DNA of 64,000 nucleotides from IMG/VR virus record IMGVR_UViG_3300027963_000035, positions 1-64,000 of that record; one strand, given 5' to 3'. Of the stretch, positions 31,825-51,351 are shown piece after piece. The notes beneath the pieces were generated by a model, which was not told the origin of the DNA, searched no databases, and worked only from the letters and a program-made list of their open reading frames with translations. Both the position numbers and the translations under genes were made by a program. The stretch's first letter is position 1; the number at the start of each line of letters is the position of its first letter.

Positions 31825-32541
31825 ATGAAAACATTTATTGAGTGGCTAGAATTAAACGAGGCTCGATTTTTTTCTAATTTGTTTGGAGCCAAGAAACAAG
31901 TTGCTCCACAAAATGTGAATCAAGAAACACCAGAAGAAAAAGAACGTAGAAGACAGTCTGATGCTCACGATGATGCAATGAGGATGTTGGTTCCTGGTTA
32001 TAAGCCCTCTGAAAATAAGACCAGTATATCACAACCTAACCTACCAAAAATCTCACAACCTCAACAACAAAATAAACTATCAAAGGCTTTGGATTTGCCT
32101 AAATCTGGGGGTAAAACGCTATTTGATCAACTATATGATTTAGTGGGAGACAAAATACTACCGATTCAGAGAATGAGATCTGAGTCTGATTATTCTCTGA
32201 AGAATTCATCAAATAGTTCTAGATTACGTGAGGCCTATTCATGGCTGTCTCGGGCTAAAAATTACGGAGATGACAATTACGGACTGTCGGTCTCTGAAAT
32301 CGACAAGGCAATTAATATCATAGAGAAGATGTTCAAGGATGAGCTGGGAGCAGTTGCCTTCCCAGACGAAGAAGTAGTTGTTCCGTATGCCAAACCAGAT
32401 TGGAATCCGAAGGATTATCACATCAGTGACGCAGGGATAAGTAGTCTTGAAGAGCCTGCGAAGGTAATAGTAAAAGGTTTCAGATATAGTGGAAGGACTA
32501 CACCCGCTATAATTAGTATAAAAGCCTTTAAAAATTCCTAA
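31825..32541 (+). CDS. CTS-like protein (MKTFIEWLELNE) with a weakly GrpE-like C-terminus
   Basis: 238 aa ORF. Confidence 0.65.
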   Translation: MKTFIEWLELNEARFFSNLFGAKKQVAPQNVNQETPEEKERRRQSDAHDDAMRMLVPGYKPSENKTSISQPNLPKISQPQQQNKLSKALDLPKSGGKTLFDQLYDLVGDKILPIQRMRSESDYSLKNSSNSSRLREAYSWLSRAKNYGDDNYGLSVSEIDKAINIIEKMFKDELGAVAFPDEEVVVPYAKPDWNPKDYHISDAGISSLEEPAKVIVKGFRYSGRTTPAIISIKAFKNS

Positions 32542-32609
32542 AAGAGGAAAAGTATTTAAACTTAAATTTTGTCATTTGTACTCCTATACATTAAACAATA
32601 GGAGTGCAA

Positions 32610-33332
32610 ATGACAAGAAAGAAAACAAGTCCCGTCTGGATTTTAAATAAAAAAGAAATTCAAGAGCTTTTAAATAATTCTAATAGTTTCGTTGAAGTTT
32701 TAGAAAAAATAGGATTAGATGCACATAGCGGAAATCATAGAACTCTTAAAGAAAGAATAAAACAAGATTCGCTTGATATTAAAGAGCTGGAAAAGAGGAG
32801 GAAAGATAGGATAGGACAGTTTTCGATTAAAAATAAAATACCTTTAGATGAAATAATGGTAGAGAATTCAAGTTATGGAACAAACCATCTCAAAAAAAGA
32901 ATATTAGATGAAAAAATGTTAGATTATGCTTGTGAAAAATGTAAAAACAATGGTAATTGGCTAGGCAATAAGTTGGTCCTACAACTAGAACATAAAAATG
33001 GAAATTCTAAAGATCACAGGCTGGATAATCTTTGCTTTTTATGTCCAAACTGTCACACACAAACATCAACTTATGCCGGTAAGAATAGCAGCTTAAAAAA
33101 AAGTAGAATATGTATTGAATGTAAGGGCCCAACTAAAGGTAAGGGAACTAAGTGTAGAAGGTGTGCTTCTCAAAAACAACCAAAAAAGTTTTTTGTTACA
33201 AAAGAAGAGCTTCAAAAGTTAGTTGAAATATATCCTCTTACAACAATAGGAAGAAAATTTGGAGTGTGTGGCAACTCAATAAAGAAAAGATGCAGATCTT
33301 TCGGAATAGAAAATAGTAGAAAGAAAAAATAA
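32610..33332 (+). CDS. HNH homing endonuclease with flanking HTH/Zn modules
   Basis: CEKC...LQLEHKNGNSKDHRLDNLCFLCPNCH; AGGAG Shine-Dalgarno at 32600-32604. Confidence 0.9.
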   Translation: MTRKKTSPVWILNKKEIQELLNNSNSFVEVLEKIGLDAHSGNHRTLKERIKQDSLDIKELEKRRKDRIGQFSIKNKIPLDEIMVENSSYGTNHLKKRILDEKMLDYACEKCKNNGNWLGNKLVLQLEHKNGNSKDHRLDNLCFLCPNCHTQTSTYAGKNSSLKKSRICIECKGPTKGKGTKCRRCASQKQPKKFFVTKEELQKLVEIYPLTTIGRKFGVCGNSIKKRCRSFGIENSRKKK

Positions 33333-34485: not shown

Positions 34486-34959
34486 TTAAGATTGTTGAGA
34501 TAATTTATAATAATTTGCTAATTCGCTCTCTAGGCCATTGATGTATTCAACTATTTTATTATAGTTTCCTTGCTTAACATCATCAACTACCCACTGTGGT
34601 GCTGTGTTGCTATTTAAATCACGATTATTCATTATAAAAGCAAGAGCAGAGTTTATTATTCTAAATTCAAAGTTATTTGCAAAAGTAATCTTTCTGTCGA
34701 AAGGCATTAAGTTTTCTGCTACCATTTTGAAATGTCTTTTTATATGATCTAAAAGAACATCTGGTTTAGCTTGATTTTGTTTTGAACCTACAACTCTTTC
34801 TAATTCTTTTAATATTTGCCTGCTCTGCCCTATAGCCTTTACAAATGCATCTTTTAATCGGGGATCAGTATTGGCTCCACCTTGAGCTGGTTGTTTGGTG
34901 GCTACAAAACCTTGTTGTTGTGGATAGTTCTCGTTTAACCATTCATAAAATGTTTTCAT
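34486..34959 (-). CDS. CTS-like protein (MKTFYEWLNE)
   Basis: 157 aa ORF with an AAGGA Shine-Dalgarno. Confidence 0.7.
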   Translation of the reverse strand: MKTFYEWLNENYPQQQGFVATKQPAQGGANTDPRLKDAFVKAIGQSRQILKELERVVGSKQNQAKPDVLLDHIKRHFKMVAENLMPFDRKITFANNFEFRIINSALAFIMNNRDLNSNTAPQWVVDDVKQGNYNKIVEYINGLESELANYYKLSQQS

Positions 34960-34993
34960 AATTTTTCCTTTTCAAAATATATCTTATATCTGA

Positions 34994-35404
34994 TTAACCC
35001 CCATATGGCCAATCTTCTCTTTGTCTTCTCGTGTCAGTGACTGGAAGTCGCCATTCCCCAGTTTTAGGATCACGTATTAATCCTCTAGCTTCCTTTTTCT
35101 TCCGTTCAAGAGCTTCTTCCTCTTTCTTTTTTCTCAAATATTCTGCATTTGCACCCATTGATGCTTCATGGTCTTTTTTTGCCTGAGCCATCCATTGTCT
35201 TTTCTCTTTTTCTTCTTCTGCTTTTTTCATTCTCAAATATTCTGGGCTTCTTTTGTATCTTTTTTGTTCTGCTTCATCTTCTTCAGCAGTAGTTTTACCC
35301 ATAAGTCCCATATTTTGTAATGGTTTTCTAATGAACCCTGGTGTGTAATCCGCCATGTTTTCTTCTATGTTTTTTTCTTTGAGCCATTCATTAAAGCTTT
35401 TCAT
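34994..35404 (-). CDS. CTS-like charged coiled-coil protein (MKSFNEWLKE)
   Basis: 136 aa ORF with an AGGAG Shine-Dalgarno. Confidence 0.7.
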   Translation of the reverse strand: MKSFNEWLKEKNIEENMADYTPGFIRKPLQNMGLMGKTTAEEDEAEQKRYKRSPEYLRMKKAEEEKEKRQWMAQAKKDHEASMGANAEYLRKKKEEEALERKKKEARGLIRDPKTGEWRLPVTDTRRQREDWPYGG

Positions 35405-35453
35405 AATAACTCCTAAAATAAGATAATTTATATATACTTTAAAAAGCTATTTT

Positions 35454-35960
35454 CTACCAATTTTGTCCGATGTACTTGATGGTTTCGATTCCGCTTTTTG
35501 ATTTTGTTGTAATCCATCTTTCTTTTCTATCATTTGTTTCGTCTTTAATCACTTCGCCTTGAATTATTCCTTGTTGAAGCAACTCTTCGGGTCCCAACTT
35601 AACCATGGCCTGGGGAACTTGATTAGCTCTACCAATGAATTTTGTACTTTTGACTCCGTTGGCCCATCTGGTTTCGATGCTTCTAGCACCAGTTCTGTCG
35701 GTTATATCTTTGATAATTTCACCTTCAATCACTCCTTTTTGGAGCAATTCTTCTGGGCTAAGATTGACCATGTTTTGGGAGAGACGCCCACCAGACGATT
35801 TACGCTCTGGTTTAGAGGGAGAATATGTTTTTTTCTCATCTTGTCCTAGTTGATGACCAATCAAGGCGCCAACTGGACCACCAAGAAGAAATCCTGCTCC
35901 TGCTGCCGCTGGCTTGGATACTTCATTTTTTCCTGCCCGCCACTCTTGGAAACTTTTCAT
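35454..35960 (-). CDS. CTS-like protein (MKSFQEW) with a glycine zipper and an internal duplication
   Basis: GAGFLLGGPVGALIG, and two copies of MVxLxPEELLQxGxIxGExIKD. Confidence 0.7.
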   Translation of the reverse strand: MKSFQEWRAGKNEVSKPAAAGAGFLLGGPVGALIGHQLGQDEKKTYSPSKPERKSSGGRLSQNMVNLSPEELLQKGVIEGEIIKDITDRTGARSIETRWANGVKSTKFIGRANQVPQAMVKLGPEELLQQGIIQGEVIKDETNDRKERWITTKSKSGIETIKYIGQNW

Positions 35961-36069
35961 GATATTTTCCTTTCGTAATCTGATATCATATGTAGTTAGT
36001 GCGTGTAATTTTACCGCTATTTTTCTGGCGTGGGGGGATAAATATATATACTGTTTAATATATAAATAT

Positions 36070-37629
36070 ATGAAAAATTACCAAGAAGCAATAGTTGATG
36101 CTCCGAGCCAATCACTCTCTGATATTTTTGACCCCGAAGGAAAACTAAAGTCAGAGGTTGTTAATACTATTATCAAAGGTATCCAGGAGATAAAAAATCA
36201 ATTCCCCAATCTACCAATAGATGATTATTTCGTTGTGGGAGCAGCCGTAACTTACCAGTATTCTCCAAAATCTGATATTGATACAACAATCTCTGTCCCT
36301 CGTGCTCCTGATGATGTTTTTAAACAAGCAAACGATTGGATAGGTTCAAATTTAGATCCTAAATATAAATTTGGCGCTCGTCCATATCAATTCAAAGTTT
36401 CCAAGGGCACAAGAGGCCAATTGCAATCCTTCGATGCAGTATATGATGTTAAAAGCCAAATTAAAACAGGTAAACCAACTTGGATAAAAAAACCAGATCC
36501 AAATAAAACAAGTATGGATTTCAAAAAATTTATATCAAACCAAGAAAGCGAAGAACACGAGTTATATAAATCAATCGAGAAAACAATTAAACCATCAATT
36601 GAAAATTTATTAAAATTAATTAAAGCATCAGGTGGAGTTCTAAACGATCAAATTAAACAGCAAACTGCTGCAGTCTTGGACCGATACAAAATAATTAAAA
36701 AATTAAGATCGAAGTCCTATGACGGGCCAGCTGATTTAAGAGATCAAGATAAGATGAGCAAAAATTGGGGCGTAGGCAATATAGTATATAAATTTCTAGA
36801 CAGAGAGGGTTATGTTGATTTATTTGGAATTTTAAAAGAATTAGTAAAAAATCAATTTCAAAACTTTACATCTATTGTTGGAAAATTAATAAGCTCCCTA
36901 CAGCATGTCGTCAGTAGTTCGATTGGTTTTGGTGTAGGTCATATGAAACAACCACAAATGCAACCACGACCACGAACACAAATGCAACCACGAACAACAC
37001 GACAAGCTCCAAGGCCGCAATTGCAACAATCTTCACAACTGCAAACGGCTTCTATGTTATATAATTCTCCAATGTTATCAGAAGAAAACAATAAGAAAGT
37101 GTTAATAATTGATGTTGAATCCACTTGTGATACTAGTCCAATAACAAATGAAATAATAGAGATAGGATTATCAGATACATCTGGGGCAAAATTTCCTCCT
37201 CTATTCATAAAGCCTGAAAAATCTGAGGTAACAAAATTTTGCACAAAATTAACTTCAATAACACCCGATCAAATAGATAAGCTGGGATTAAGTCCACAAG
37301 AAGCATATAGAAAATTAAATAAAATATTTTCCATGTATGACAAATGGGCATCATATGGAGATTACGACAAAGAGATGCTTTTAAAAATGGAAAGTTTATA
37401 CGGACTAACTATTAATATGCCCGAACACGAAAACGTAAGACTTTTATTTGCACAAAAAGTATTTAATTCAAATAATCCTCAAGTTGCTCCTAAAAATCCA
37501 AAAGACGCACTTGAAATGCTTGGGATGTCTTTCAAGGGATTCAACCATAGAGGTGCAGATGATGCTATGAACATTGCAAATCTTTACAATGTTTTACAAG
37601 ATTATAAAGGCGCAAAGAATCCTCTTTAG
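36070..37629 (+). CDS. Nucleotidyltransferase (Pol-beta fold) fused to a DEDDh 3'-5' exonuclease
   Basis: VGAAVTYQYSPKSDIDTTI (hG[S/A]...DxD), a Q/P/R linker, then IIDVEST, YGDYD and HRGADDA. The start at 36070 follows TATAAATA. Confidence 0.8.
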   Translation: MKNYQEAIVDAPSQSLSDIFDPEGKLKSEVVNTIIKGIQEIKNQFPNLPIDDYFVVGAAVTYQYSPKSDIDTTISVPRAPDDVFKQANDWIGSNLDPKYKFGARPYQFKVSKGTRGQLQSFDAVYDVKSQIKTGKPTWIKKPDPNKTSMDFKKFISNQESEEHELYKSIEKTIKPSIENLLKLIKASGGVLNDQIKQQTAAVLDRYKIIKKLRSKSYDGPADLRDQDKMSKNWGVGNIVYKFLDREGYVDLFGILKELVKNQFQNFTSIVGKLISSLQHVVSSSIGFGVGHMKQPQMQPRPRTQMQPRTTRQAPRPQLQQSSQLQTASMLYNSPMLSEENNKKVLIIDVESTCDTSPITNEIIEIGLSDTSGAKFPPLFIKPEKSEVTKFCTKLTSITPDQIDKLGLSPQEAYRKLNKIFSMYDKWASYGDYDKEMLLKMESLYGLTINMPEHENVRLLFAQKVFNSNNPQVAPKNPKDALEMLGMSFKGFNHRGADDAMNIANLYNVLQDYKGAKNPL

Positions 37630-37853: not shown

Positions 37854-38642
37854 TTATGTGGTGCAATATTTATTTTTAAATTCCTCCTCATCATAAATAT
37901 CTGCTTTTAATATGTTATCTGGCCCCGGGATAGGACGAAGATTCTCTAGTGAATTTATCTTTTTAATATCAAGTATTCCATGATCTAAAAATGCTTTAAT
38001 TGGAAATATATGATCTACATGCCATGCCTTATCTTTGCATTTTTCATAATCTGGGTGATTTAATATATGCTCTTGTAATTGTTGTGGAGTATAACCCAAT
38101 AGTTCGTGTGTATGGCGTGTTTTATGTTTTCCTGTGGCCTCCATGAATCTTTTAATATGTTGGCCGCACATTTTACGGAACCTTTTACGCAAACTAACAG
38201 CCTCTCTATCTGGATCATACATATGACAATTAGCCCCAGATATTTTTAATGAGCCGCACTTTTTACAATTAGGATATCTTTTAAAATTACCTAAATATGC
38301 TTCTGATTCTCTACCGCATTTACAAACATATTTGATTCTCGTCCTAGTTTTATAAATCCAAGATTCAACTAATTTACATCCATTTTTTTCACATATTTCT
38401 TTTATATCGTTGTCTTTTGTTTTAAATTTATTTGAGAGAATTTTAGGTTTGCAGTTTTCGACGCATCTTTTCCCATTTTGAACGTTAGCTAATCGCATCA
38501 TTGTTTCGTTTCCGCAAATACATATGCACCTCATGGGCTCATTATTATTTTTATAATTTGTTTCCAATAATTTAAATCCTTTTTCTTCAAAAATATGTTT
38601 TACTTGACTATAAGAAAACTTATTTGCTCCTCCGCTTGACAT
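37854..38642 (-). CDS. HNH homing endonuclease with Zn-ribbon repeats
   Basis: CICGN/CKCG repeats, then LLGYT...WHVDHIFP...NLRP...DNILK; GAGG Shine-Dalgarno. Confidence 0.8.
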   Translation of the reverse strand: MSSGGANKFSYSQVKHIFEEKGFKLLETNYKNNNEPMRCICICGNETMMRLANVQNGKRCVENCKPKILSNKFKTKDNDIKEICEKNGCKLVESWIYKTRTRIKYVCKCGRESEAYLGNFKRYPNCKKCGSLKISGANCHMYDPDREAVSLRKRFRKMCGQHIKRFMEATGKHKTRHTHELLGYTPQQLQEHILNHPDYEKCKDKAWHVDHIFPIKAFLDHGILDIKKINSLENLRPIPGPDNILKADIYDEEEFKNKYCTT

Positions 38643-38685
38643 TTTTTCCTCACTTTTAAGTTTGATTGTGTATAGCGTATTATAC

Positions 38686-38717
38686 AAAAAAACCTTGGCT
38701 GTTTCCAGCCAAGGTTT
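38686..38717 (-). terminator. Intrinsic terminator after the major capsid gene
   Basis: On the minus strand: aaaccttggctg-GAAA-cagccaaggttt followed by a T run. Confidence 0.88.
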
Positions 38718-38749: not shown

Positions 38750-40174
38750 TCAGACAATGAAGTTAGCGATGTTAAGTCTGGCATAAAATTTTGCTCCTTC
38801 TCGAAGCAACTTCTTCCCATACCTTGTTAACAGACCCTTACGTGGTGTGAAGGAATCTGGATCAAGGACTACTGGAGTCTGGGTGAGTGGCACGTATGGG
38901 CAGTAGAAGTATCCGCTGTCCATGTAGCTGTCGCCCTTATATCCCATTAGGATTTGACCTGTTGGGAACAGTGGGTCCTTGTAGAGTCTCCAACGATTGT
39001 TCACAGTTCCGACATACTGGATGCCGAGTGAGCTAGTGAAAGTCTCTGAAGGAGCTGGAGCGAAACCGGCTGTGGCTGTTTCGAATACTGAAGCAACTTC
39101 TGGACTTGTTACTAACCAATTGGCACCACCACGTAGTGTCTTACGATGAATTACGTTGCTGACTTCAACAACCTTAACGTATAGACTCTCGTAGCGTTCC
39201 TTGACTGTATCACCGAGGGCGGTGCTATAGTCCCAAGCACTGACGGTACCGGCGTTATTGCGGAGGTCACCTAGAACTTCACGGTCGATTTCTAGATTGA
39301 TTTCCTGAGCAAGAACGGCAGTTAGCTCAGCCTCGGCGTCGAGGTTGTGCTGTGAACGTAGATCTTGCTGAGCCTCATAACTCCAAACTGCCTTCAGTTT
39401 ACGAGTCTTGGCGGCAATCTCTTCGCTCTCGATGGCGAGATTGATCTCGGGCATATCACTGTTGCCTTCCATGTTGTATTCATATGATACAACTACGGTG
39501 TTGGCACTTGGATCATTATTCCAAGTTAGACTAACAGCACCAGTTGTTGGATTAAGTGTACCACTTGTTACCTTGTTACTTGGGCTGCCAACGTCGGTGA
39601 CACTCATTGTGCCGCCAGCTGAAACAACGAAAGTATTGACAACAACTGTACCATCATAAACTGTACCGGTCATTGTGCCAGCGATAACTGGAACGTGCTC
39701 AACAGTGAAAGCAGTGGTTGTGCCACCGGCGTCAGTATGGCTCTCGTTCTGAACGAACTGATGAGAGTAGAAGACGTCGAGATTGGCTGTACCATCGGCT
39801 AACTGCTGTAGTGAGTTAACGTCATCACCTGGGAATCCGCCCTTAGCGGCTCCACGGACAGCACCCTTGTTGCTGCCATATCTAAAACGGAGATAGTAAA
39901 CTAGACCGGTTGGGCCGAGCAATGGCTGGACCGAGACGATCTTGTTTGCAATCAACTGTGGGTAAACTCTGCGAACAAGTGGGATGCTGATTCTTTTGAA
40001 TTGAGCAACGTCACCTGTGTCGGTTGAAACTTCATTGATGAGTCTCTGGTTCTCGAGAAGAACAGCTGTGGTGGATCGGACGTAACGATCTTCGATGCCC
40101 TCCAACAAGCCGGTTTTCTTCCAACGACCTTCTAACTCCTTCGCTTCGTTGAGAAATTTAGCATTTATATTCAT
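38750..40174 (-). CDS. gp23: Major capsid protein (T4 gp23-like)
   Basis: SVQPLLGPTGLVYYLR, AKTRKLKAVWSYEAQQDL, EINLEIDRE and YCPYVPL. Confidence 0.97.
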   Translation of the reverse strand: MNINAKFLNEAKELEGRWKKTGLLEGIEDRYVRSTTAVLLENQRLINEVSTDTGDVAQFKRISIPLVRRVYPQLIANKIVSVQPLLGPTGLVYYLRFRYGSNKGAVRGAAKGGFPGDDVNSLQQLADGTANLDVFYSHQFVQNESHTDAGGTTTAFTVEHVPVIAGTMTGTVYDGTVVVNTFVVSAGGTMSVTDVGSPSNKVTSGTLNPTTGAVSLTWNNDPSANTVVVSYEYNMEGNSDMPEINLAIESEEIAAKTRKLKAVWSYEAQQDLRSQHNLDAEAELTAVLAQEINLEIDREVLGDLRNNAGTVSAWDYSTALGDTVKERYESLYVKVVEVSNVIHRKTLRGGANWLVTSPEVASVFETATAGFAPAPSETFTSSLGIQYVGTVNNRWRLYKDPLFPTGQILMGYKGDSYMDSGYFYCPYVPLTQTPVVLDPDSFTPRKGLLTRYGKKLLREGAKFYARLNIANFIV

Positions 40175-40219
40175 TTTTCTTACTTTCTTTTAATAGATTG
40201 ATTAGCCAGTAGAATCCGT

Positions 40220-41116
40220 TCAGTCTTCTATCTTTTTAATACCAGCTAAAATGTGCAAATCGTTAAAGTCGTGTTGAGTACCATTATTTTCCGCAATAAC
40301 AGCTTCACCAGCGACTACTTGTCCTCTCCCCATTACATTCTTGCTCTTTTCAGCTCTTTCTTTCATTTCATTAACAGTTTTTACCTGTTTTTCATTCTCT
40401 ACAGCCTTGACTTGTTCGGTCACAACTGTTTGTGCGTGGCGAACAGCCTCGGTTAGTTTTGTGTTCTCTGTCGATAGTCTTATGCTTCTGGCCTCTAATA
40501 GCTTGATTTGGCCCTTGAGATCATCAATCTGCTTCTTGGCTTCATCAACCTTAGCAGAACTGACACTTGCATAATCTTCGTCACTTAGATATTCACTTGT
40601 GATATCAACAATCTTGTCGAAAGCACTTCTGTGCTCGACAGTTCTTGGATCAGCAAGGACATCCTTCTTGGCTTGTTCATAGATTTCGGCACCCTTGAAC
40701 TGTAGAAATTGATCTACTTTGTCAACGATGTACTCTTTCATCTCGGCAAGCTTCTTGTCGTATTCTTCATAGAGGGAAACTTCAAGACTACCATTCTTGC
40801 TTCTCTCCTCTTTGAGCATTTCATAAGCTTCTTCGTAGCCCTCTTCGAGAGCTGCTTCATACTCTTCACCTTGAACTTCAAGACGATTTCTGAGTTCAGA
40901 GATGATAGCATAAGCTTCGGTATAACCTTCTTCTGCTGTCTTTTCAGCTGACTTTAGTTCATTGGAAACTTCGGCGTAGGCCTCCTCCAATTTGGAATTA
41001 AATTCAGTCTCTAGTTCTGACTTTGCATCCTTTAACATTTCTTCGACTGCTGAGCTTACCTCTTGAATCTGATCAGCAGGTAAGAGTTTTTCTAGTGCTT
41101 CTTTAATTTTGTTCAT
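40220..41116 (-). CDS. gp22: Prohead core scaffold protein (T4 gp22-like)
   Basis: Acidic coiled coil located between the protease and the capsid gene, with KVDQFL and an ATGA overlap with gp21. Confidence 0.8.
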   Translation of the reverse strand: MNKIKEALEKLLPADQIQEVSSAVEEMLKDAKSELETEFNSKLEEAYAEVSNELKSAEKTAEEGYTEAYAIISELRNRLEVQGEEYEAALEEGYEEAYEMLKEERSKNGSLEVSLYEEYDKKLAEMKEYIVDKVDQFLQFKGAEIYEQAKKDVLADPRTVEHRSAFDKIVDITSEYLSDEDYASVSSAKVDEAKKQIDDLKGQIKLLEARSIRLSTENTKLTEAVRHAQTVVTEQVKAVENEKQVKTVNEMKERAEKSKNVMGRGQVVAGEAVIAENNGTQHDFNDLHILAGIKKIED

Positions 41117-41802
41117 GAGCCTAAACCTCGCTTTAATGAATTGGTTGAATTTTCGATTATTGTTCCTAAACAAGCAATTAACGCTTCTTTATTAACAGTA
41201 TATATGCTGCTGCTTTCATTTTTTGCAGGAATTTCTTCCACCGCAGAAGAAATTTCTACACTTTCTTTCTTATCCTTCTTATCAGTAACCTTCTCTTGAA
41301 AAGCTGCGAAAGTGCTAGGATCAGCTACTGCGTCGAATGTTATAAGTTTATAACTTTCACCGATAACTAATACTCCATTTTCATTTACTTTTCCATTACC
41401 AACGCCTCTGCTGCTAATGCCAACTCTAACACCGTCGTTCAAAAGACTTCTCAGTATTTTTCCGTGAGGTGTGTTGAGTATTTCGCCTTCGCCCATGAGG
41501 ACATTGCCGTCCCACCAAAGCTTGGTGATGACATGGCTAGCCTTTTCAAAATGTATAATGCTGTCGGTTGGGTGATCTAACTCACCAATTAAACCTCTGT
41601 GCTTTACACATTCGTTAAGTTTTTTGACGTTCTCACTGAGAACTTCAAAAGGATATATTCTTTTGTTTTTATTAATAGCTTCAGCTTCTTGGAACTTGCC
41701 ACGGAATCTGGTTAAGCCTTTGTCCGTGACACTTTCATTTAGGTCCATGTTGAACCCACCACCGCTGCAGCTATCTACGAATAGCATTTGATCTTTTGAC
41801 AT
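41113..41802 (-). CDS. gp21: Prohead maturation protease (T4 gp21-like)
   Basis: NKNKRIYP, GELDHP, VGISSRGVG and FDAVADPS. Confidence 0.95.
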   Translation of the reverse strand: MSKDQMLFVDSCSGGGFNMDLNESVTDKGLTRFRGKFQEAEAINKNKRIYPFEVLSENVKKLNECVKHRGLIGELDHPTDSIIHFEKASHVITKLWWDGNVLMGEGEILNTPHGKILRSLLNDGVRVGISSRGVGNGKVNENGVLVIGESYKLITFDAVADPSTFAAFQEKVTDKKDKKESVEISSAVEEIPAKNESSSIYTVNKEALIACLGTIIENSTNSLKRGLGS

Positions 41803-41820: not shown

Positions 41821-43608
41821 TTATTTGGCAAAAGGATTCTGAAGACCTGGCCAAGTATCTTTACCTTGGTTTGTTCCGAGATCTTCACCATCCTTATCAA
41901 CTCCTTTTTCGCCCTTCATCGTGAATTCCATTGCATTTGGAATATAAGGATTAGTTAATGATGGATAGACGTGGTCACCGCCAACGTTGCCCCAACCATT
42001 ATCTTTCATCTCATCATCTAAATCGTTTACAATAGTCTTGCCATCGCTAACTGGAGCTGGGCTATCGACTACACTCTTGTCCTCAAGATCAGCAGCTGGG
42101 CTGTAACTTTTTCTTGCCTTTTCACTAAGCGATGGGTGATCCCCATTAACACTCATTGTTGGCATACTGTCAGCCCAATCTTCGCATCCGAGATTACTCT
42201 CATAGATATCCTTGAGGTAGTTGGCAACAAACTCAGCAAGTTGAACATCTGGTTCTTCTTCTTGGTTGACAACTAGGATGCACTCATCGAGTAGTTCCGA
42301 AGCTTCAGCAACAACTTCTTTGTCGCCAAGTTTTTCGGCTAATACTTTGAGGTTCTCTAGAGCCTCAACTAGATCTTCGAAAACCTTGAGATCAGCACTG
42401 GCTGATTCATCAAGATACTTGTAGAACTTGTCAGCAACTTCTTTGAATCCTGGATACTTGTCTTCGCACTCTTCACAAACTGTGGCACCAGCTAAATTTG
42501 TGATTTTGTTAACACGATCTGAATAAGCATTGTGAGCGGTTCTTAGTAGACCCTCAGCAATGAAATTGCAGGTATTATCATCAAAATTTCTGGCTCCAAC
42601 TGTCTCAAGGGCTTCTTTAACCATTGAAGATAGTTCTTCTTGAGTGACATAAACTAGTTCTGGAAAATTCTTAACAGCATTCTCTAAACTTGTCTCAAGC
42701 ATGTTGTTATCAGAAATATTGTTGTACTTCTTGATTTGAGCAACACTCTTGACGAAGTTTTCATTCTTTACAAGGCATTTGCCTTTGCTTCTGAGAACCT
42801 TGACTTCGGTGTCGAGAGTCTTCCAATCGAAACTTAATACTTTGCCTTCATTTACTTTGCTTACTGTTGGAACTTTGATTCCAACGATATCACCTTTATC
42901 GTTTTGTTCAACGATGCATTCTTTGTAAACATGGCCCATTTCTTTGTGATTTACATAACCAAGAACGTTCTCTGTTAGGCTGGTCCATTCCTTCATAGTC
43001 TTAACAACATAAATTCTGGCTCTTGGATTGCTGATGTTCTTAAGACGACGCTTGGCACTGGCTGTCTTCATCTTGAGGTAGTTCTTGAGGCTAGCACGCT
43101 TTCTCTTTGTTTTCATCATTGAGCGAATACGTTTGGCAACAAGGCTTCTTGGCTGCTTCTTGTGGAACAATTTGCTCCTCTTGCCAGTTGGCTTGCTTAA
43201 CTTAACTTTGAAACCTTCTGAAATTAGGTTTCTTCTTACTGATGGCATATTGAGATACTCGCTAAGAACTTCTGAAGCGACTTCTTCTTTATTCTCAAGA
43301 AGATTATCAATCATGTCAGAGATGAGTTTCTTTGACTCATTCTTTTCTGTCTCTTCATCGATTACTAGTTCTTCGATGTTTTCTAGAGCAAGATTATCGT
43401 TGGTTAGTTTGTAGTTGGCACGAACGATATCTTCGTTTACTGTCTTGTAAACAACTTCTGACTCATTAAAGAACATGAGTTCAAGTTTTTCTGTTTCAAG
43501 AATTGTTGCAAGAAGCTCCTCAGCTTCGATTAGCTCCTTCTCAACTCTGGATACTGACTCATTCTCCATTTTCTTGAATTCATCATAATTGATTAATTTA
43601 CGCTTCAT
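41821..43608 (-). CDS. Large acidic head-associated/prohead core protein (putative)
   Basis: Directly upstream of gp21. Glu-rich with many L/I-x-E sites and a basic insert; AGGGAG Shine-Dalgarno before ATG 43608. Confidence 0.6.
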   Translation of the reverse strand: MKRKLINYDEFKKMENESVSRVEKELIEAEELLATILETEKLELMFFNESEVVYKTVNEDIVRANYKLTNDNLALENIEELVIDEETEKNESKKLISDMIDNLLENKEEVASEVLSEYLNMPSVRRNLISEGFKVKLSKPTGKRSKLFHKKQPRSLVAKRIRSMMKTKRKRASLKNYLKMKTASAKRRLKNISNPRARIYVVKTMKEWTSLTENVLGYVNHKEMGHVYKECIVEQNDKGDIVGIKVPTVSKVNEGKVLSFDWKTLDTEVKVLRSKGKCLVKNENFVKSVAQIKKYNNISDNNMLETSLENAVKNFPELVYVTQEELSSMVKEALETVGARNFDDNTCNFIAEGLLRTAHNAYSDRVNKITNLAGATVCEECEDKYPGFKEVADKFYKYLDESASADLKVFEDLVEALENLKVLAEKLGDKEVVAEASELLDECILVVNQEEEPDVQLAEFVANYLKDIYESNLGCEDWADSMPTMSVNGDHPSLSEKARKSYSPAADLEDKSVVDSPAPVSDGKTIVNDLDDEMKDNGWGNVGGDHVYPSLTNPYIPNAMEFTMKGEKGVDKDGEDLGTNQGKDTWPGLQNPFAK

Positions 43609-43775
43609 TAGTTTCTCCCTAAGATAATTTTGTTTTTGCAAAAAGGTTCGATACTAGTTTAGTATATTGTTGAATAAAACCTTAAATGTATATACACTTT
43701 TGCCTTTAAAAATTTTTCAAAAAAAACATATATACATTTTAGTGTTAGTTAAACAAACAAAATTAAAGGAAAAAT

Positions 43776-44126
43776 ATGAAAAGTTTTCAAGAATATTTAA
43801 AAGATAATAATAGTGTTTCTGAAGTCACAGGTATGAATGTTGGAAAAACAGCCTATGGCACCGCTAGTTTCAGCAACAGCGAAGCAGAGCAGCTCACTCA
43901 CATGATGAAGGTTGTTGATATGGCAATCGCTGAGAACCCACAGAGATTTATGAATGCTCTAAGAGGCATTGCTTCAAACAACCCAGAAATGGAACTATTG
44001 ATCTCAAATATTAATCTTCCAAAACTCAAGATGGCTGCTAAGAAACATGTTGAAGAGAATGAGGCTGCTGAAGATCATGATTCAATGGGTGGAGATGAGT
44101 CAAAATATCTACCAAAAGGCATGTAA
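43776..44126 (+). CDS. CTS-like protein (MKSFQEYLKD)
   Basis: 116 aa ORF with an AAGGA Shine-Dalgarno. Confidence 0.7.
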   Translation: MKSFQEYLKDNNSVSEVTGMNVGKTAYGTASFSNSEAEQLTHMMKVVDMAIAENPQRFMNALRGIASNNPEMELLISNINLPKLKMAAKKHVEENEAAEDHDSMGGDESKYLPKGM

Positions 44127-45716: not shown

Positions 45717-46365
45717 ATTTTATCTATTGTTTTCTCTCTATTATTTTATGCAGAAAAAAGAACTATTATTGGTGATTACACACTATAGAGAAAATAATGT
45801 TTTAGTTGATACATTGAATACTAATAAGAGAATACAAAAAATAGACCTACAGTTATACAAAGATATAAATAATCTTTTTTCTCTAGGATCTATTAGAAGC
45901 GGATATAGAAAAAATCCCCATATTTATATGGATCCTCTTTACTATAATCATCAATTCTGTTTTGCTCCTTTATTAAATTTTTGTAAATTTATTTATCTTG
46001 TAAATAAGCCAAGATTAGTGATGCCAAATCTAATCGGGAACAAAACGTACAGCTCAGAGTCGTGTTTAAACTATTATTGTTTTAGGCTTCGCAAGATCTA
46101 TGAAATGATAAGAAAAACTCCCAAGCAAAACTTTAAAGTCTATTTTGACGAGGAGTTTACCCTACCTGAAACTTACAAAAAAATTCAAGAGTTCTTAGAT
46201 TTAAAAGAAGAATTTAATATCAGAAAAGAAAATAGTGTTGCTGACTTTAATATCAGCAACACTATTCTTGAAAAAGCAAATGAGTGTTATGAAAAATATA
46301 GGTTTAAAATCAAGGGGCTACAGGGGCAGGAGCAGGAGCACCGCCTCTTGGAGCCATTGGCATAG
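45703..46365 (-). CDS. Hypothetical protein, possibly a degenerate sulfotransferase fold
   Basis: C-terminal FDEEFTLPETYKKIQEFLDL resembles sulfotransferase C-termini; no PSB loop seen; start uncertain. Confidence 0.45.
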
Positions 46366-46825
46366 AAACTTGGGCATCCTGCATTTTTGGAATGTTCTCT
46401 TTCTCCTTCATTAGTCCCTTTAGAATTCCGCCAAGATAAGAAGCAACTGTTTGTCTTGGATTGGTCGAAGATGGCATACTTGCAGTTTGTGGATTTTTTT
46501 GAAGTTGATTCACAAGATCGTTTAAAACTCTTGCCGCAGAATCAAACTTCGAAGCAGGGCCGGCTAATGTATCGGCGGCTTGAGCAGCACCACCTTTGAT
46601 ACCGCCACCGTCCCAAACATTTTTTCCAAATTGCTTGGCAGCACTCCAGGCATTTTTGCCAAATGCCTTTAGGCTATCCATGAAACCTTCGTCAAGTTCC
46701 ATCTCGGGAGCGTTTTCTAAAATATATTCGGCGGGATTGATGTCCATCTCAACCATAAGTCCTGCAATGCTCTCAACTAGTGTGTCGATATTTTTTTGTT
46801 CAATAAACTCATTAAATGTTTTCAT
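46310..46825 (-). CDS. CTS-like protein (MKTFNEFIEQ)
   Basis: 171 aa ORF with a GAGGA Shine-Dalgarno. Confidence 0.7.
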   Translation of the reverse strand: MKTFNEFIEQKNIDTLVESIAGLMVEMDINPAEYILENAPEMELDEGFMDSLKAFGKNAWSAAKQFGKNVWDGGGIKGGAAQAADTLAGPASKFDSAARVLNDLVNQLQKNPQTASMPSSTNPRQTVASYLGGILKGLMKEKENIPKMQDAQVSMPMAPRGGAPAPAPVAP

Positions 46826-50571: not shown

Positions 50572-51351
50572 AGATTTTTTGTCATGTATCGTGTATTCTT
50601 TTCTTCCATACTGTACACCATTTTTGCACTGATTAAAATATACTGAATCAAAGAATAGTTTATCTGGTTCTACTAAATAAATTTCTATATCATTATTATT
50701 TAAATGTTGATTTATATCTCTTATCATTATCTCATACAAACTAATATCGAGTGCTCTAAAGGCCATTTCTAATGGCTTTAAAATTCCCTTTGCGCCTTCC
50801 CAATAAGAAAGAGTTAAAGGTCTACCCATTATCACATATATTTCGTTATATCCTAAATCTATGCATTGTTTTAATGGCGCTAATTGGCGACTGCCGGCAT
50901 CAACCCAGCCGTTTCTATCTTCTACTAGTCCTGTAATTGCAACGCTTGAAAGCACATTTTCCTTAAACTCATCTGCTGTTATTCCTTTATTGGAAACATA
51001 CATCATCTCTCCAGAATGAATATTTAACTTAGAAACTATACTTTCACATACTGGGGTGTTCTTTAATGCGTTGGAAACTATTTTTTCCATTGGTTTTTGA
51101 TTTAACATCCCTGTTTTTCTCCAGGGAAAGTAATTAATCCCAAAAACATCAAATATGTTTTTTATATTAGACCACATATCTGCAACACCTTGTGGCCCCA
51201 AATAAGCATAACTAGCTGCGCATATACTCCCAGAACTGATCCCTATTGTTAATTCTGGTTTTATATTACTCTCATATAGAGATAAAGCTATTCCCGCTTG
51301 TATACTTCCTCTAGCTCCTTCTCCCGTAAAACAAAAAGCAGTTCTTTTCAA
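50539..51351 (-). CDS. Patatin-like phospholipase
   Basis: GEGARG (oxyanion), GISSG (GxSxG) and VDAG (catalytic Asp). Confidence 0.88.
   Translation of the reverse strand: MKRTAFCFTGEGARGSIQAGIALSLYESNIKPELTIGISSGSICAASYAYLGPQGVADMWSNIKNIFDVFGINYFPWRKTGMLNQKPMEKIVSNALKNTPVCESIVSKLNIHSGEMMYVSNKGITADEFKENVLSSVAITGLVEDRNGWVDAGSRQLAPLKQCIDLGYNEIYVIMGRPLTLSYWEGAKGILKPLEMAFRALDISLYEIMIRDINQHLNNNDIEIYLVEPDKLFFDSVYFNQCKNGVQYGRKEYTIHDKKSLRNILPKIVN

What the first reader, a model, noticed from the sequence alone, without database searches (positions are those of the whole stretch)
36070..37629. CTS-tagged nucleotidyltransferase-DEDDh exonuclease fusion
Seen in sequence: a Pol-beta-type NTase motif (G-A...SDID), a Q/P/R-rich linker ending in MLSEE (an L-x-E site), and a complete DEDDh exonuclease (DVE, DYD, H...DD). 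The gene has a CTS-like start and a perfect TATAAATA just upstream. Inference: a late-expressed, packaged enzyme pair, possibly split by the prohead protease, that trims and re-tails RNA 3' ends (for example repair of tRNAs cut by host anticodon or CCA nucleases) or makes and degrades nucleotide signals on entry.
Basis: partly seen in the sequence, partly recalled or inferred. Interest (0 to 1): 0.66.

Follow-up and report, generated by a model that had tools for sequence, protein, structure and literature searches.

The report
Capsid-tagged nucleotidyltransferase–exonuclease fusion in huge phage
A huge freshwater T4-type phage encodes one protein that joins a nucleotide-adding enzyme to an RNA-trimming exonuclease, and its wider family carries the kind of tag T4 uses to load proteins into the capsid, so it is probably injected with the DNA to rework nucleic-acid ends early in infection.

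Summary
The ORF at 36070..37629 (+, 519 aa) is real and is a genuine fusion.

- **N-terminal half (aa 1-295):** a Pol-beta-superfamily nucleotidyltransferase. G57-A58, D69-x-D71 and D122/D126 are conserved, and the AF2 model has pLDDT 92.6. It belongs to a large, unannotated viral superfamily.
- **C-terminal half (aa 340-519):** a complete ERI1/KapD-like DEDDh exonuclease (D348, E350, D433, H493, D498).
- **Fusion:** ten fused homologues lie on other contigs. A contig from an independent sample crosses the junction without a difference.
- **Linker:** disordered and variable, but it keeps [LIV]-x-E in the nine fused proteins aligned.
- **Capsid tag:** superfamily members usually begin with a T4-CTS-like leader ending hydrophobic-x-E before S/A. 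Unrelated proteins in the same genomes share that leader. The window has T4-type head genes, including a Peptidase_S77 prohead protease. A distant family member in cyanophage S-CREM2 was found in purified virions. This protein's own leader is only six residues.
- **TATAAATA:** not enriched as an 8-mer. It is part of a recurrent start-proximal TAATATATA motif.
- **Function:** most likely 3'-end tailing and trimming of RNA by an injected enzyme. The substrate is inferred, not shown.

I rate it a new variant of known kinds.

The parts
36056..36068 (+). Probable promoter or initiation signal of a co-regulated gene class.
   Evidence: TATAAATA is not enriched: 49 copies against about 57 expected. 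ATATA[TA]A lies within 18 nt of 22 of 294 gene starts, against a 1.2% non-coding background. The TAATATATA core sits 5 or 7 nt before the ATG in about 10 genes, many of them leader-tagged. The closest relative, L007, keeps it.
36070..37629 (+). ORF of 519 aa (P0001): NTase-linker-exonuclease fusion.
   Evidence: Fused homologues: P0002-P0009 and L019. An independent contig spans 36429-37166 with 0 differences.
36070..36087 (+). Short N-terminal leader MKNYQE (aa 1-6). Candidate remnant of a capsid-targeting propeptide, with a candidate cleavage site after E6 (before A7).
   Evidence: In relatives the leader is 4-59 aa and ends hydrophobic-x-E before S/A. P0005 has the full MKKFNEW-type leader upstream of the same NYQE|AIVD junction.
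36088..36954 (+). Pol-beta-superfamily nucleotidyltransferase module (aa 7-295): alpha/beta catalytic core (about aa 28-140) plus a helical bundle (about aa 144-282).
   Evidence: AF2 pLDDT 92.6. VIA-align hits to minimal NTases: 1ylq Z 8.0, 2rff Z 7.3, 1no5 Z 6.8-7.1. Foldseek hits are all Pol-beta NTases. Relatives pass the Pfam NTP_transf_2 cut-off.
36238..36282 (+). Catalytic motifs G57-A58 (36238-36243) and D69-I70-D71 (36274-36282).
   Evidence: Invariant in A1 and in A3.
36433..36447 (+). D122 to D126 (motif D-A-V-Y-D). Candidate third carboxylate.
   Evidence: D122 is invariant in the close family. In the superfamily, position 122 is D or E in 65 of 79 and position 126 is D in 64 of 79. 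The geometry could not be checked.
36955..37086 (+). Disordered Q/P/R-rich linker (aa 296-339), with an imperfect 24-nt tandem repeat at 36947-37005.
   Evidence: pLDDT below 50 for aa 304-339. TRF result. The linker is long only in P0001-P0004 and is short or different in P0005-P0009.
37075..37083 (+). L336-S337-E338. Candidate prohead-protease site at the domain junction.
   Evidence: [LIV]-x-E is kept at this junction in all 9 aligned fused proteins: LSE, LAE, LSE, ISE, ISE, and VHE four times. It lies at the end of the disordered segment, 5 residues before the first exonuclease strand.
37087..37626 (+). DEDDh 3'-5' exonuclease domain of the ERI1/KapD type (aa 340-519). Catalytic codons: D348 (37111-37113), E350 (37117-37119), D433 (37366-37368), H493 (37546-37548), D498 (37561-37563).
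   Evidence: Pfam RNase_T E 6e-12. PDB ERI1 1w0h E 3e-8, with alignment. NCBIfam KapD E 8e-11, below the equivalog cut-off. PADLOC Cas-associated DEDDh E 1e-9.
34486..35960 (-). Three small ORFs (34486-34959, 34994-35404, 35454-35960), each starting with an MK[TS]F.EW leader. Candidate internal (packaged) proteins, divergent from the fusion gene.
   Evidence: They have no similarity to each other beyond the leader and no convincing PHROG match: none for two, and one weak hit (E 0.006) for 34486-34959.
37854..38687 (-). HNH endonuclease gene lying between the fusion gene and the major capsid gene.
   Evidence: PHROG 559, E 2.7e-10.
38750..41802 (-). T4-type head genes: Gp23 major capsid protein (38750-40174), scaffold-position ORF (40220-41173), and Peptidase_S77 prohead protease (41113-41802).
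   Evidence: Pfam Gp23 E 1e-89 and Peptidase_S77 E 2e-27. PHROG 138 and 207. The scaffold is assigned by position and by 49% identity to the L019 ORF in the same position.

Best explanation
The gene encodes a two-enzyme protein of a huge freshwater phage with T4-type head genes.

Shown:
- The N-terminal 295 residues form a Pol-beta-superfamily nucleotidyltransferase. It has a minimal-NTase-like catalytic core plus a helical bundle, and the catalytic Gly and Asp-x-Asp are intact.
- The C-terminal 180 residues form a complete ERI1/KapD-type DEDDh 3'-5' exonuclease.
- A disordered, evolutionarily variable linker joins them.

Inferred:
- The protein is loaded into the prohead through its N-terminal T4-CTS-like propeptide.
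- The phage's Peptidase_S77 protease trims it after Glu6.
- The same protease possibly splits it at Leu336-x-Glu338.
- It is ejected into the host with the DNA.
- There the pair remodels nucleic-acid 3' ends, most likely on RNA. The exonuclease removes damaged or unwanted 3' nucleotides, and the transferase adds nucleotides without a template. This would repair or neutralise host attacks on RNA or tRNA ends before phage genes are expressed.
For: Domains:
- Pfam RNase_T at 46.8 bits. The ERI1 alignment shows all five DEDDh residues.
- The NTase motifs are invariant.
- AF2 pLDDT 92.6. Structural neighbours of the core are minimal NTases, Z 7-8. All Foldseek hits are Pol-beta NTases.
- The A1 profile finds 1176 cluster representatives. 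Among long ones, 16 of 50 hit NTP_transf_2, 12 hit Polbeta and 4 hit the MTPAP palm.

Fusion:
- Ten fused homologues at 56-86% identity lie on separate contigs.
- A contig from independent sample X4 crosses the junction.
- An NTase gene sits next to a different DEDDh exonuclease gene in L021, which is an independent pairing.

End-processing theme among relatives:
- P0178 is LigD 3'-phosphoesterase + ATP ligase + this NTase.
- P0154 is NTase + 2H phosphoesterase.
- In L004 the gene lies two genes from an Rnl2-type RNA ligase.

Packaging:
- Gp23 and Peptidase_S77 lie within 4 kb of the gene.
- The fused gene sits beside the capsid gene in L019 too. The NTase gene abuts Peptidase_S77 in L025. The related exonuclease P0039 lies inside the head module in L013.
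- In 129 superfamily members the junction before the conserved core has P1 = E in 123, P1' = S/A in 123, and P3 = I/L/V in 90 plus F/Y/M in 26. Leader lengths have modes at 10 and 14 residues.
- The same leaders head unrelated neighbouring proteins in L010, L011 and L022. They also head 15 unrelated ORFs of this genome, against about 0.3 expected.
- T4 precedent for the CTS comes from PMC3012670 and PMC9026906.
- S-CREM2 ORF156 matches the superfamily profile (hhalign probability 98.8%, E 6e-17). It was detected in CsCl-purified virions with 6 unique peptides (PMC10665884).
Against: - This protein's own leader is only 6 residues. It has Ala at CTS position 7 and Asp at position 10. In T4, position 7 matters for targeting and Asp10 blocks processing.
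- Several relatives (L001, L004, L007) do not lie near head genes.
- The hydrophobic-x-E-[SA]-[IV]-x-D motif could simply be the conserved N-terminal strand of the domain.
- S-CREM2 ORF156 is a distant relative that lacks the canonical leader and the D122 equivalent.
- No activity, substrate, cleavage or timing has been measured.
- Other partner domains point to nucleotide or NAD chemistry rather than RNA ends: CTP_transf_like, NUDIX, P-loop kinase, PAP2, Tad6 and Acb1-like.
- The structural Z scores are middling.
- The position of the third carboxylate could not be verified, because model coordinates are not exposed.
- The genome already has two PolyA_pol/CCA-family genes. This argues against a simple CCA-adding role.
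Confidence: 0.5

Rival explanations
1. Nucleotide- or NAD-centred counter-defence. The NTase acts on small nucleotides, either making a decoy or consuming or nucleotidylating a signal or metabolite. The exonuclease degrades linear oligonucleotide signals or their breakdown products. Together they blunt CBASS-, Thoeris- or type III CRISPR-like signalling on entry.
For: The same fold is joined in viral proteins to CTP_transf_like, NUDIX, AAA_33/Zeta kinase and PAP2, and in sequence relatives to Tad6 and an Acb1-like 2H domain. CTP_transf_like genes sit beside family members in S-CRM01, S-CREM2 and L001. Foldseek lists CD-NTases and aminoglycoside NTases among the top hits. HIGH-NTase + Nudix or kinase fusions are the NAD-salvage enzymes of jumbo phages (PMC7824862).
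Against: DEDDh exonucleases need a free 3'-OH, so they cannot open cyclic signals. The exonuclease's closest relatives (ERI1, KapD, Cas-associated DEDDh) act on polynucleotides. The N-domain has no PADLOC or Pfam CD-NTase match. Tad6 acts by binding ThsB, not by catalysis, so that fusion says little about the NTase's chemistry.
Confidence: 0.15
2. DNA-end enzyme. The pair trims and tails the ends of the injected or replicating phage genome, or host DNA. This could protect ends from RecBCD-like nucleases or serve an end-joining or repair pathway.
For: P0178 has a LigD-like layout (3'-phosphoesterase, ATP-dependent DNA-ligase domain, then this NTase where LigD has its polymerase). The exonuclease matches PHROG 192, 'DNA polymerase exonuclease subunit', and Cas-associated DEDDh. 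A protein packed with the DNA is well placed to act on its ends.
Against: The best solved relatives of the exonuclease are RNA exonucleases. A family member neighbours an RNA ligase, not a DNA ligase, in L004. MTPAP-like palm hits among relatives point to ribonucleotidyl transferases.
Confidence: 0.12
3. An ordinary cytoplasmic phage enzyme that is never packaged. The conserved N-terminal motif is simply part of the fold, and its neighbourhood to head genes in this window is incidental.
For: The leader here is only 6 residues, and some relatives have 4-5. Residues from about 10 onward are modelled with high confidence as part of the domain. The contexts of L001, L004 and L007 are non-structural. 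The gene is on the opposite strand to the head genes, with an HNH gene between them.
Against: The leaders are modular. The same leader heads unrelated proteins in the same genomes, with 15 in this genome against about 0.3 expected. Leader ORFs are concentrated at 31.8-52 kb around the head genes. Head-gene adjacency recurs in L013, L019 and L025. A superfamily member is present in purified S-CREM2 virions.
Confidence: 0.3
4. A protein-modifying MNT-like enzyme. The NTase AMPylates a host protein, for example a HEPN RNase toxin as MNT antitoxins do, while the exonuclease acts separately.
For: The closest solved structures of the catalytic core are minimal NTases, including HI0073 and a HEPN-MNT complex chain (8xeh_E, Z 6.8). 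There is a weak profile hit to the AMPylase DrrA, E 0.3.
Against: The Z scores are middling and the hit list is generic. The module is about 290 aa with its own helical domain, unlike MNTs of about 100 aa. No HEPN partner was seen in the contexts examined. The partner domains are nucleic-acid or nucleotide enzymes.
Confidence: 0.06

Closest known systems
T4 internal proteins IPI/IPII/IPIII and their capsid targeting sequence (CTS), processed by the gp21 prohead protease (Mullaney & Black 1996, as reviewed in PMC9026906 and PMC3012670)
   Same: A short N-terminal leader of the MK-x-[FY]-x-E-[FWY]-[IL]-x-E type is shared by otherwise unrelated proteins. It ends in an [ILV]-x-E site before Ala or Ser. 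The genes cluster near T4-type head genes, and a Peptidase_S77 protease is present.
   Different: The cargo is a 519-aa two-enzyme protein, not a small basic protein. This protein's own leader is a 6-residue remnant with Ala7 and Asp10. Packaging and cleavage have not been shown for it.
Minimal nucleotidyltransferases (MNT; PDB 1ylq, 2rff, HI0073 1no5) and two-domain NTases such as KNTase/ANT(4') and AadA
   Same: Pol-beta catalytic core with hG[GS], D-x-D and a downstream acidic residue, followed (as in ANT and AadA) by a helical domain. VIA-align Z is 6.0-8.0 for the core. ANT(9), ANT(4') and AadA are the top Foldseek hits.
   Different: Sequence similarity is marginal: the best PDB profile hit has E 0.0014. 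The helical half has no specific match. Position 58 is Ala instead of Ser or Gly. There is no HEPN partner and no aminoglycoside context.
RlaP (RNA-ligase-associated Pol-beta NTase, Pfam PF10127), predicted to restore lost nucleotides before RNA ligation in phages (PMC7824862)
   Same: It is a phage-borne Pol-beta NTase. One family member lies two genes from an Rnl2-type RNA ligase. The proposed role is restoring RNA ends.
   Different: The N-domain and its relatives have no PF10127 match. The genome holds no RlaP and no PF09414 ligase. Here the NTase is fused to an exonuclease and carries a CTS-like leader.
ERI1/3'hExo and Bacillus KapD DEDDh 3'-5' exonucleases
   Same: All five catalytic residues align. 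These are the best solved and NCBIfam matches.
   Different: There is no SAP domain. The KapD score is far below the equivalog cut-off (41.8 against 169 bits). It is fused behind an NTase.
Tail-and-trim RNA 3'-end systems (Trf4 poly(A) polymerase with exosome/Rrp6; trypanosome TUTase with U-specific exonuclease) and bacterial LigD (phosphoesterase-ligase-polymerase)
   Same: They combine a template-independent 3' nucleotide adder with a 3' trimming or healing activity. Relative P0178 copies the LigD layout, with this NTase in the polymerase position. There is a weak profile hit to Trf4 (3nyb), E 0.58.
   Different: This is an analogy of logic only (own knowledge). No homology beyond the superfamily has been shown, and the substrate is unknown.
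S-CREM2 ORF156 and S-CRM01 g125 (hypothetical proteins of cultured T4-like cyanophages)
   Same: They belong to the same NTase superfamily by profile comparison (probability 98.8%, E 6e-17). ORF156 is virion-associated by mass spectrometry.
   Different: They are about 240 aa, with no exonuclease and no canonical leader. The D122 equivalent is not conserved. Only about 22% of aligned positions are identical.

Membership tests
Pol-beta nucleotidyltransferase superfamily | hG[GS] motif between strand 1 and helix 2 | tested here: met
   V55-V56-G57-A58. G57 is invariant in 79 sequences. Position 58 is S in 62, A in 14 and G in 3, so this clade carries an Ala variant.
Pol-beta nucleotidyltransferase superfamily | [DE]h[DE]h carboxylate pair on strand 2 | tested here: met
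   D69-I70-D71-T72 lies on the predicted strand 70-75. D69 and D71 are invariant in 79 of 79 sequences.
Pol-beta nucleotidyltransferase superfamily | Third carboxylate positioned next to the pair in the active site | tested here: inconclusive
   D122 (D or E in 65 of 79) and D126 (D in 64 of 79) are conserved 51-55 residues downstream. The predicted strand 3 (aa 104-111) has no acidic residue. Model coordinates are not exposed, so the distances could not be measured.
Pol-beta nucleotidyltransferase superfamily | alpha/beta NTase fold | tested here: met
   AF2 pLDDT 92.6. 1ylq Z 8.0 with rmsd 3.2 over 88 residues; 2rff Z 7.3; 1no5 Z 6.8-7.1. All top Foldseek hits are NTases, although the best E is only 2e-3.
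Pfam NTP_transf_2 (PF01909) | Score at or above the gathering threshold (21 bits) | tested here: not met
   P0001 aa 1-300 scores 13.6 bits, E 0.089. Relatives found by the family profile do pass: P0098 28.6, P0154 27.4, P0142 24.8, P0097 24.1 bits. Membership therefore holds only by transitive homology.
RlaP (PF10127) | Match to the family model | tested here: not met
   No hit at E <= 1 on the N-domain, none among 50 relatives, and none in the genome.
Class II CCA-adding / poly(A) polymerase (PF01743) | Match to the PolyA_pol head domain | tested here: not met
   No hit on P0001. The two PF01743 genes of this genome lie elsewhere, at 97226-97654 and 123985-124416.
CD-NTase (cGAS/DncV-like) | Family-level sequence or structure match | tested here: not met
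   Only weak global Foldseek rows (probability 0.25-0.6, TM about 0.2). No PADLOC or Pfam CD-NTase hit.
DEDDh exonuclease (Pfam RNase_T, PF00929) | Score above the gathering threshold, and the D, E, D, H, D catalytic residues | tested here: met
   46.8 bits against a cut-off of 24. D348, E350, D433, H493 and D498 align to the ERI1 catalytic residues.
KapD equivalog (NCBIfam NF005838) | Score at or above the curated cut-off (169 bits) | tested here: not met
   41.8 bits. It is the same subfamily neighbourhood, not an equivalog.
T4-type CTS-tagged internal protein | N-terminal leader of about 10 aa with an aromatic at positions 4 and 7, I/L at 8 and Glu at 10 | tested here: inconclusive
   P0001 has Y4 (met), A7 (not met), I8 (met) and D10 (not met; in T4, Asp10 blocks processing but not targeting). 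An alternative site is Y4-Q5-E6 before A7. Relatives such as P0144, P0070 and P0129 carry near-canonical leaders.
T4-type CTS-tagged internal protein | Leader shared by unrelated proteins of the same phage | tested here: met
   15 ORFs of this genome share the leader against about 0.3 expected, with no similarity beyond it. The same holds in L010, L011 and L022.
T4-type CTS-tagged internal protein | gp21-family prohead protease and Gp23 capsid in the same genome | tested here: met
   Peptidase_S77 E 2e-27 and Gp23 E 1e-89.
T4-type CTS-tagged internal protein | Physical presence in the virion and proteolytic removal of the leader | not testable with these tools
   There is only indirect support: distant superfamily member S-CREM2 ORF156 was detected in purified virions. 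No RNA or protein data exist for this phage.

The most novel reading that the evidence does not exclude
A very large, undescribed superfamily of Pol-beta nucleotidyltransferases (over 1000 clusters at 50% identity, almost absent from cultured phages) is a standard capsid-delivered enzyme platform of environmental T4-type and huge phages. It is tagged by a T4-like propeptide and carries interchangeable counter-defence or end-repair cargo: exonuclease, 2H/Acb1-like, Tad6, LigD-like, kinase, Nudix. In this phage, the prohead protease would release two injected enzymes. Together they would erase and rewrite RNA or tRNA 3' ends altered by host defence nucleases or toxin NTases in the first seconds of infection.
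Probability: 0.15. Interest if true: 0.85.

Novelty: new variant of a known kind. Interest (0 to 1): 0.62.

Why it matters
T4's internal proteins are the textbook case of proteins injected with phage DNA to disarm the host, but the known ones are small inhibitors. This locus suggests that environmental T4-type and huge phages use the same targeting and processing logic to deliver real enzymes.

The nucleotidyltransferase module is abundant in metagenomes: 1176 cluster representatives at E <= 1e-3. Pfam does not call this protein's N-domain above threshold, the only related PHROG (36119) has no assigned function, and cultured phages hold only distant relatives. It is fused to many different nucleic-acid and nucleotide enzymes.

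If confirmed, three things follow:
- A large block of viral dark matter would gain a function.
- It would add a new class of early-acting counter-defence or RNA-repair enzyme.
- It would supply natural leader sequences for loading cargo into phage capsids.

It also gives a concrete, testable prediction of polyprotein-like processing of packaged enzymes at [ILV]-x-E sites.

Tried and rejected
- **T4 late promoter.** TATAAATA occurs 49 times against about 57 expected. It ends 1 nt before the ATG, so I rejected it as evidence of late transcription. The recurrent TAATATATA motif is kept as an unexplained start-proximal signal.
- **Assembly artefact.** Rejected, because of the fused homologues and an independent contig across the junction.
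- **C-terminal truncation by the neighbouring HNH gene.** P0002 and P0003 carry an extra C-terminal domain of about 120 aa. tblastn finds no remnant of it in this genome, and six other fused homologues end where P0001 does. I do not treat P0001 as truncated.
- **Close cultured relatives.** megablast and tblastn against 50,697 phage records gave no near relative and no N-domain hit. P0144 also gave none. Only distant cyanophage homologues turned up through P0090.
- **Family scans of the N-domain.** PHROG, NCBIfam and PADLOC gave nothing.
- **RlaP, class II CCA-adding and CD-NTase membership.** Not met.
- **RNA evidence.** The only runs holding the stretch are freshwater DNA metagenomes, so timing and transcript ends could not be examined.
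- **Helical half of the N-domain.** It gives only generic helical-bundle matches.
- **Other copies in the genome.** None found for the NTase or the exonuclease.
Full report
**Observation.** The window holds one long ORF at 36070..37629 on the + strand, 519 aa, stored as P0001. An upstream in-frame TTG at 35914 adds only unconserved residues. The two closest relatives start at the same MKNYQE/MKNYKE.
- G57-A58 and S68-D69-I70-D71.
- A Q/P/R-rich stretch (aa 296-339) ending in M-L-S-E-E.
- The DEDDh residues D348, E350, D433, H493 and D498.
- A start that matches the T4 capsid targeting sequence at 6 of 10 positions.
- TATAAATA at 36061-36068.

**Genome and neighbourhood.** The window is the first 64 kb of a 251,265-bp viral record with 35.7% G+C, estimated 50% complete. 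The DNA occurs in freshwater metagenomes. Downstream on the minus strand lie an HNH endonuclease gene (37854-38687), a Gp23-family major capsid gene (38750-40174; Pfam E 1e-89), a scaffold-position ORF and a Peptidase_S77 prohead protease (41113-41802; E 2e-27). The capsid protein is 75% identical to that of an uncultured 595-kb phage (LR756511). It is no more than 36% identical to anything else in 50,697 phage records. This is therefore a huge phage with T4-type head genes and no cultured close relative.

**The N-terminal module.** Pfam gives only a sub-threshold NTP_transf_2 hit (13.6 bits, aa 39-96). PHROGs, NCBIfam and PADLOC give nothing.
- A word search found about 45 stand-alone proteins of about 300 aa covering aa 1-300, plus eight fused proteins.
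- In 35 of them, G57, A58, S68, D69, D71, R104, K109, D122, K210, R213, N237 and K241 are invariant.
- An AF2 model built on that alignment has pLDDT 92.6. It shows the order strand-(G-A)-strand(D-x-D)-helix-strand, followed by a helical bundle.
- Foldseek finds only Pol-beta NTases (ANT(9), ANT(4'), AadA, CdnC/D/E, TENT5, class I CCA, MNT), all weakly; the best E is 2e-3.
- VIA-align places aa 29-127 on minimal NTases: 1ylq Z 8.0 with rmsd 3.2 over 88 residues, 2rff Z 7.3, 1no5 Z 6.8-7.1. The helical half gives only generic matches.
- A profile search of 1.84 billion representatives found 1176 proteins at E <= 1e-3 and 304 at E <= 1e-10.
- Of 50 long hits, 16 match NTP_transf_2, 12 match Polbeta and 4 match the MTPAP palm. 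Several pass Pfam's threshold.
- Across 79 superfamily members, G57, D69, D71 and K241 are invariant, and R213 and N237 nearly so. Position 58 is mostly Ser. Position 122 is D or E in 65 of 79, and position 126 is D in 64 of 79.

Membership of the Pol-beta NTase superfamily is therefore well supported. I could not verify the geometry of the third carboxylate, because model coordinates are not exposed.

**The C-terminal module.** Pfam RNase_T scores 46.8 bits against a cut-off of 24. The best solved relatives are human ERI1/3'hExo (E 3e-8) and ERI3. The alignment covers all five catalytic residues. NCBIfam's nearest model is KapD, far below its equivalog cut-off. PADLOC's nearest is the Cas-associated DEDDh. 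It is a complete DEDDh 3'-5' exonuclease from the branch whose solved members are RNA exonucleases.

**The fusion and its linker.**
- Eight fused homologues at 56-86% identity lie on separate metagenomic contigs. An IMG/VR contig, L019, holds another.
- A 738-nt contig from a sample not flagged as the source spans 36429-37166 with no difference. That range covers the end of the NTase, the linker and the start of the exonuclease.
- The linker is long and Q/P-rich only in P0001-P0004. It contains a 24-nt imperfect repeat and is modelled as disordered, with pLDDT below 50 for aa 304-339 and pTM 0.58.
- Despite this variability, all nine aligned fused proteins keep [LIV]-x-E just before the exonuclease: LSE, LAE, LSE, ISE, ISE, and VHE four times.
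- The related stand-alone exonuclease P0039 has Y-L-K-E in the matching position.
- P0043 joins the NTase to a second protein that keeps its own complete leader. That is a polyprotein-like arrangement.

**The leader.**
- In the family, a variable N-terminal extension of 4-59 residues precedes a conserved E-[AS]-[IV]-x-D.
- In 129 members, the residue before the core is E in 123. The next residue is S or A in 123. The residue three before the cut is I/L/V in 90 and F/Y/M in 26. Leader lengths have modes at 10 and 14.
- Many leaders are near-copies of the T4 CTS, of the type MK-T-F-x-E-F-I-x-E.
- The leaders are modular. In L010, L011 and L022, unrelated neighbouring genes start with the same MKLL-x-ENW-type leader.
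- In this genome, 15 ORFs start with the MK-x-F-x-E-W-L type, against about 0.3 expected. They share no similarity beyond the leader. Seven of them lie at 31.8-52 kb around the head genes. Three are the immediate divergent neighbours of the fusion gene.
- In T4, the CTS is the only element shared by the diverse internal proteins. Its first 10 residues suffice for packaging. Residues 4 and 7 matter for targeting, and residues 8 and 10 for processing. Asp at position 10 blocks processing but not targeting (PMC3012670, PMC9026906).
- P0001 itself has only MKNYQE before the core, giving Y4, A7, I8 and D10. Its relative P0005 has a full MKKFNEW-type leader upstream of the same NYQE|AIVD junction.

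The family-level case for a capsid-targeting propeptide is strong. The case for this particular protein is weaker.

**Head-gene linkage and virion evidence.**
- The fused gene lies about 1.4 kb from the capsid gene in L019.
- The NTase gene directly follows Peptidase_S77 in L025, where a leader-tagged AAA_33 kinase precedes the protease.
- P0039 lies between the Gp23 and Peptidase_S77 genes in L013.
- Other relatives sit in non-structural contexts.
- Distant homologues exist in cultured T4-like cyanophages.
- S-CREM2 ORF156 matches the superfamily profile with hhalign probability 98.8% and E 6e-17.
- The published virion proteome of CsCl-purified S-CREM2 lists ORF156 with 6 unique peptides and 15.2% coverage. 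Its neighbours ORF154 (cytidylyltransferase) and ORF155 are listed too (PMC10665884).

This is the only experimental evidence bearing on packaging, and it comes from a distant relative.

**Promoter.** TATAAATA is not enriched. It ends 1 nt before the ATG, so under T4 geometry (own knowledge) the transcript would start inside the ORF. However, ATATA[TA]A lies within 18 nt upstream of 22 of 294 crude gene starts, against a 1.2% non-coding background. The core TAATATATA sits 5 or 7 nt before the ATG of about ten genes, more than half of them leader-tagged. The closest relative keeps it. This suggests a co-regulated class with very short or absent 5' leaders. Timing is unknown, and no RNA data exist.

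**Function.**

Evidence for polynucleotide end processing:
- The specific partner here is an ERI1-type exonuclease.
- A family member is adjacent to a different DEDDh exonuclease in L021 (PDB 7t2s E 8e-19; PADLOC CBASS exonuclease effector, 96.5 bits).
- P0178 is LigD 3'-phosphoesterase + ATP ligase + this NTase.
- P0154 is NTase + 2H phosphoesterase + DUF192.
- L004 has an Rnl2-type RNA ligase two genes away.
- MTPAP-palm hits occur among relatives.

Evidence for nucleotide or NAD chemistry:
- The fold is also fused to CTP_transf_like, NUDIX, AAA_33/Zeta kinase and PAP2, and in sequence relatives to Tad6.
- CTP_transf_like genes recur next to family members.

The genome already has two PolyA_pol/CCA-family genes, and it has no RlaP or PF09414 RNA ligase in the held half. 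A dedicated CCA-adding role is therefore unlikely.

I rank a 3'-end trim-and-tail activity on RNA first. Nucleotide-signal interference, DNA-end processing and MNT-like protein AMPylation are the rivals. A non-packaged cytoplasmic role is a rival to the delivery part only.

**Comparison with known systems.**
- It works like a T4 CTS-tagged internal protein in delivery logic.
- It works like tail-and-trim RNA 3'-end machines, or the predicted RlaP NTases of phage RNA repair (PMC7824862), in chemistry.
- It is a member of the Pol-beta NTase superfamily and of the RNase_T DEDDh family.
- It is not a member of RlaP, class II CCA-adding enzymes, CD-NTases or the KapD equivalog.

**Novelty and limits.**
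- The enzyme folds are known.
- The superfamily is large and, as far as the tools show, undescribed.
- New here are its systematic CTS-like leader, the NTase-ERI1 fusion and the polyprotein-like [ILV]-x-E junction. I rate it a new variant of known kinds.
- Packaging, cleavage, timing and substrate are all inferences.

Noticed in passing
whole genome G000; in the window: 17744-18151(-), 31825-32541(+), 34486-34959(-), 34994-35404(-), 35454-35960(-), 43776-44126(+), 46310-46825(-), 51348-52004(-), 10182(+): Fifteen unrelated ORFs begin with a leader of the MK[TSNKL]F.EW[LI] type, against about 0.3 expected by chance. Seven lie within 20 kb around the head genes. They are candidate packaged internal proteins, analogous to the T4 IP family.
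   Followed up: partly
window 36056-36066 and about 20 other gene starts (e.g. 18151-, 31825+, 60839+; beyond the window 64662-, 93400+, 142009-): The motif TAATATATA(A) lies 5 or 7 nt before the ATG of a subset of genes, about 6-fold over the non-coding background. No Shine-Dalgarno sequence is evident in the gene starts inspected by eye, which suggests leaderless or near-leaderless mRNAs of a co-regulated class. In L019 the motif precedes an ATG 10 codons upstream of the leader, which does not fit neatly.
   Followed up: partly
window 37854-38687(-) and 32604-33332(+): HNH-type endonuclease genes flank the internal-protein-like cluster, and one sits between the capsid gene and the fusion gene. 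In relative L019 the fused gene has the same orientation as the head genes, with a 391-aa ORF between them. In the window it is inverted relative to them.
   Followed up: no
window 41821-43641(-): A 606-aa ORF in the position where T4-type phages have the portal gene gave no PHROG or Pfam hit at the thresholds used. It is either a very divergent portal or something else.
   Followed up: no
G000 97226-97654(-) and 123985-124416(-), outside the window: Two separate PolyA_pol (class II CCA-adding / poly(A) polymerase) family genes, 416 and 441 aa open frames, lie in one phage genome. The same genome has 5-6 tRNA genes at 144-212 kb.
   Followed up: no
L010 8001-9338 (P0043) against L011 7414-7902 and 8001-8924: P0043 fuses the NTase to a second protein that is a separate upstream gene in L011. 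The second part keeps its own initiator Met and its leader (MAKLTESYLR..MKE). This is a polyprotein-like join of two leader-tagged modules.
   Followed up: partly
L004 11100-16462: A phage-like contig carries T4-type polymerase, clamp-loader and RNA ligase genes. It also carries curli secretion genes CsgF and CsgG, a FecR-domain gene and a CHASE2-guanylate-cyclase gene.
   Followed up: no
L030 (S-CREM2 ORF154-156) and L029 (S-CRM01 g125-g127): In cultured T4-like cyanophages, a cytidylyltransferase, a small hypothetical protein and the distant NTase homologue are adjacent. In S-CREM2 all three are virion-associated by mass spectrometry. Elsewhere the same two enzyme folds occur fused in single proteins of 860-960 aa.
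   Followed up: partly
L007 5451-6410 and 4992-5411: A caspase-like Peptidase_C14 gene and a thioredoxin gene lie just upstream of the closest fused homologue (P0002). P0002 also carries an extra C-terminal domain of about 120 aa with no family match.
   Followed up: no
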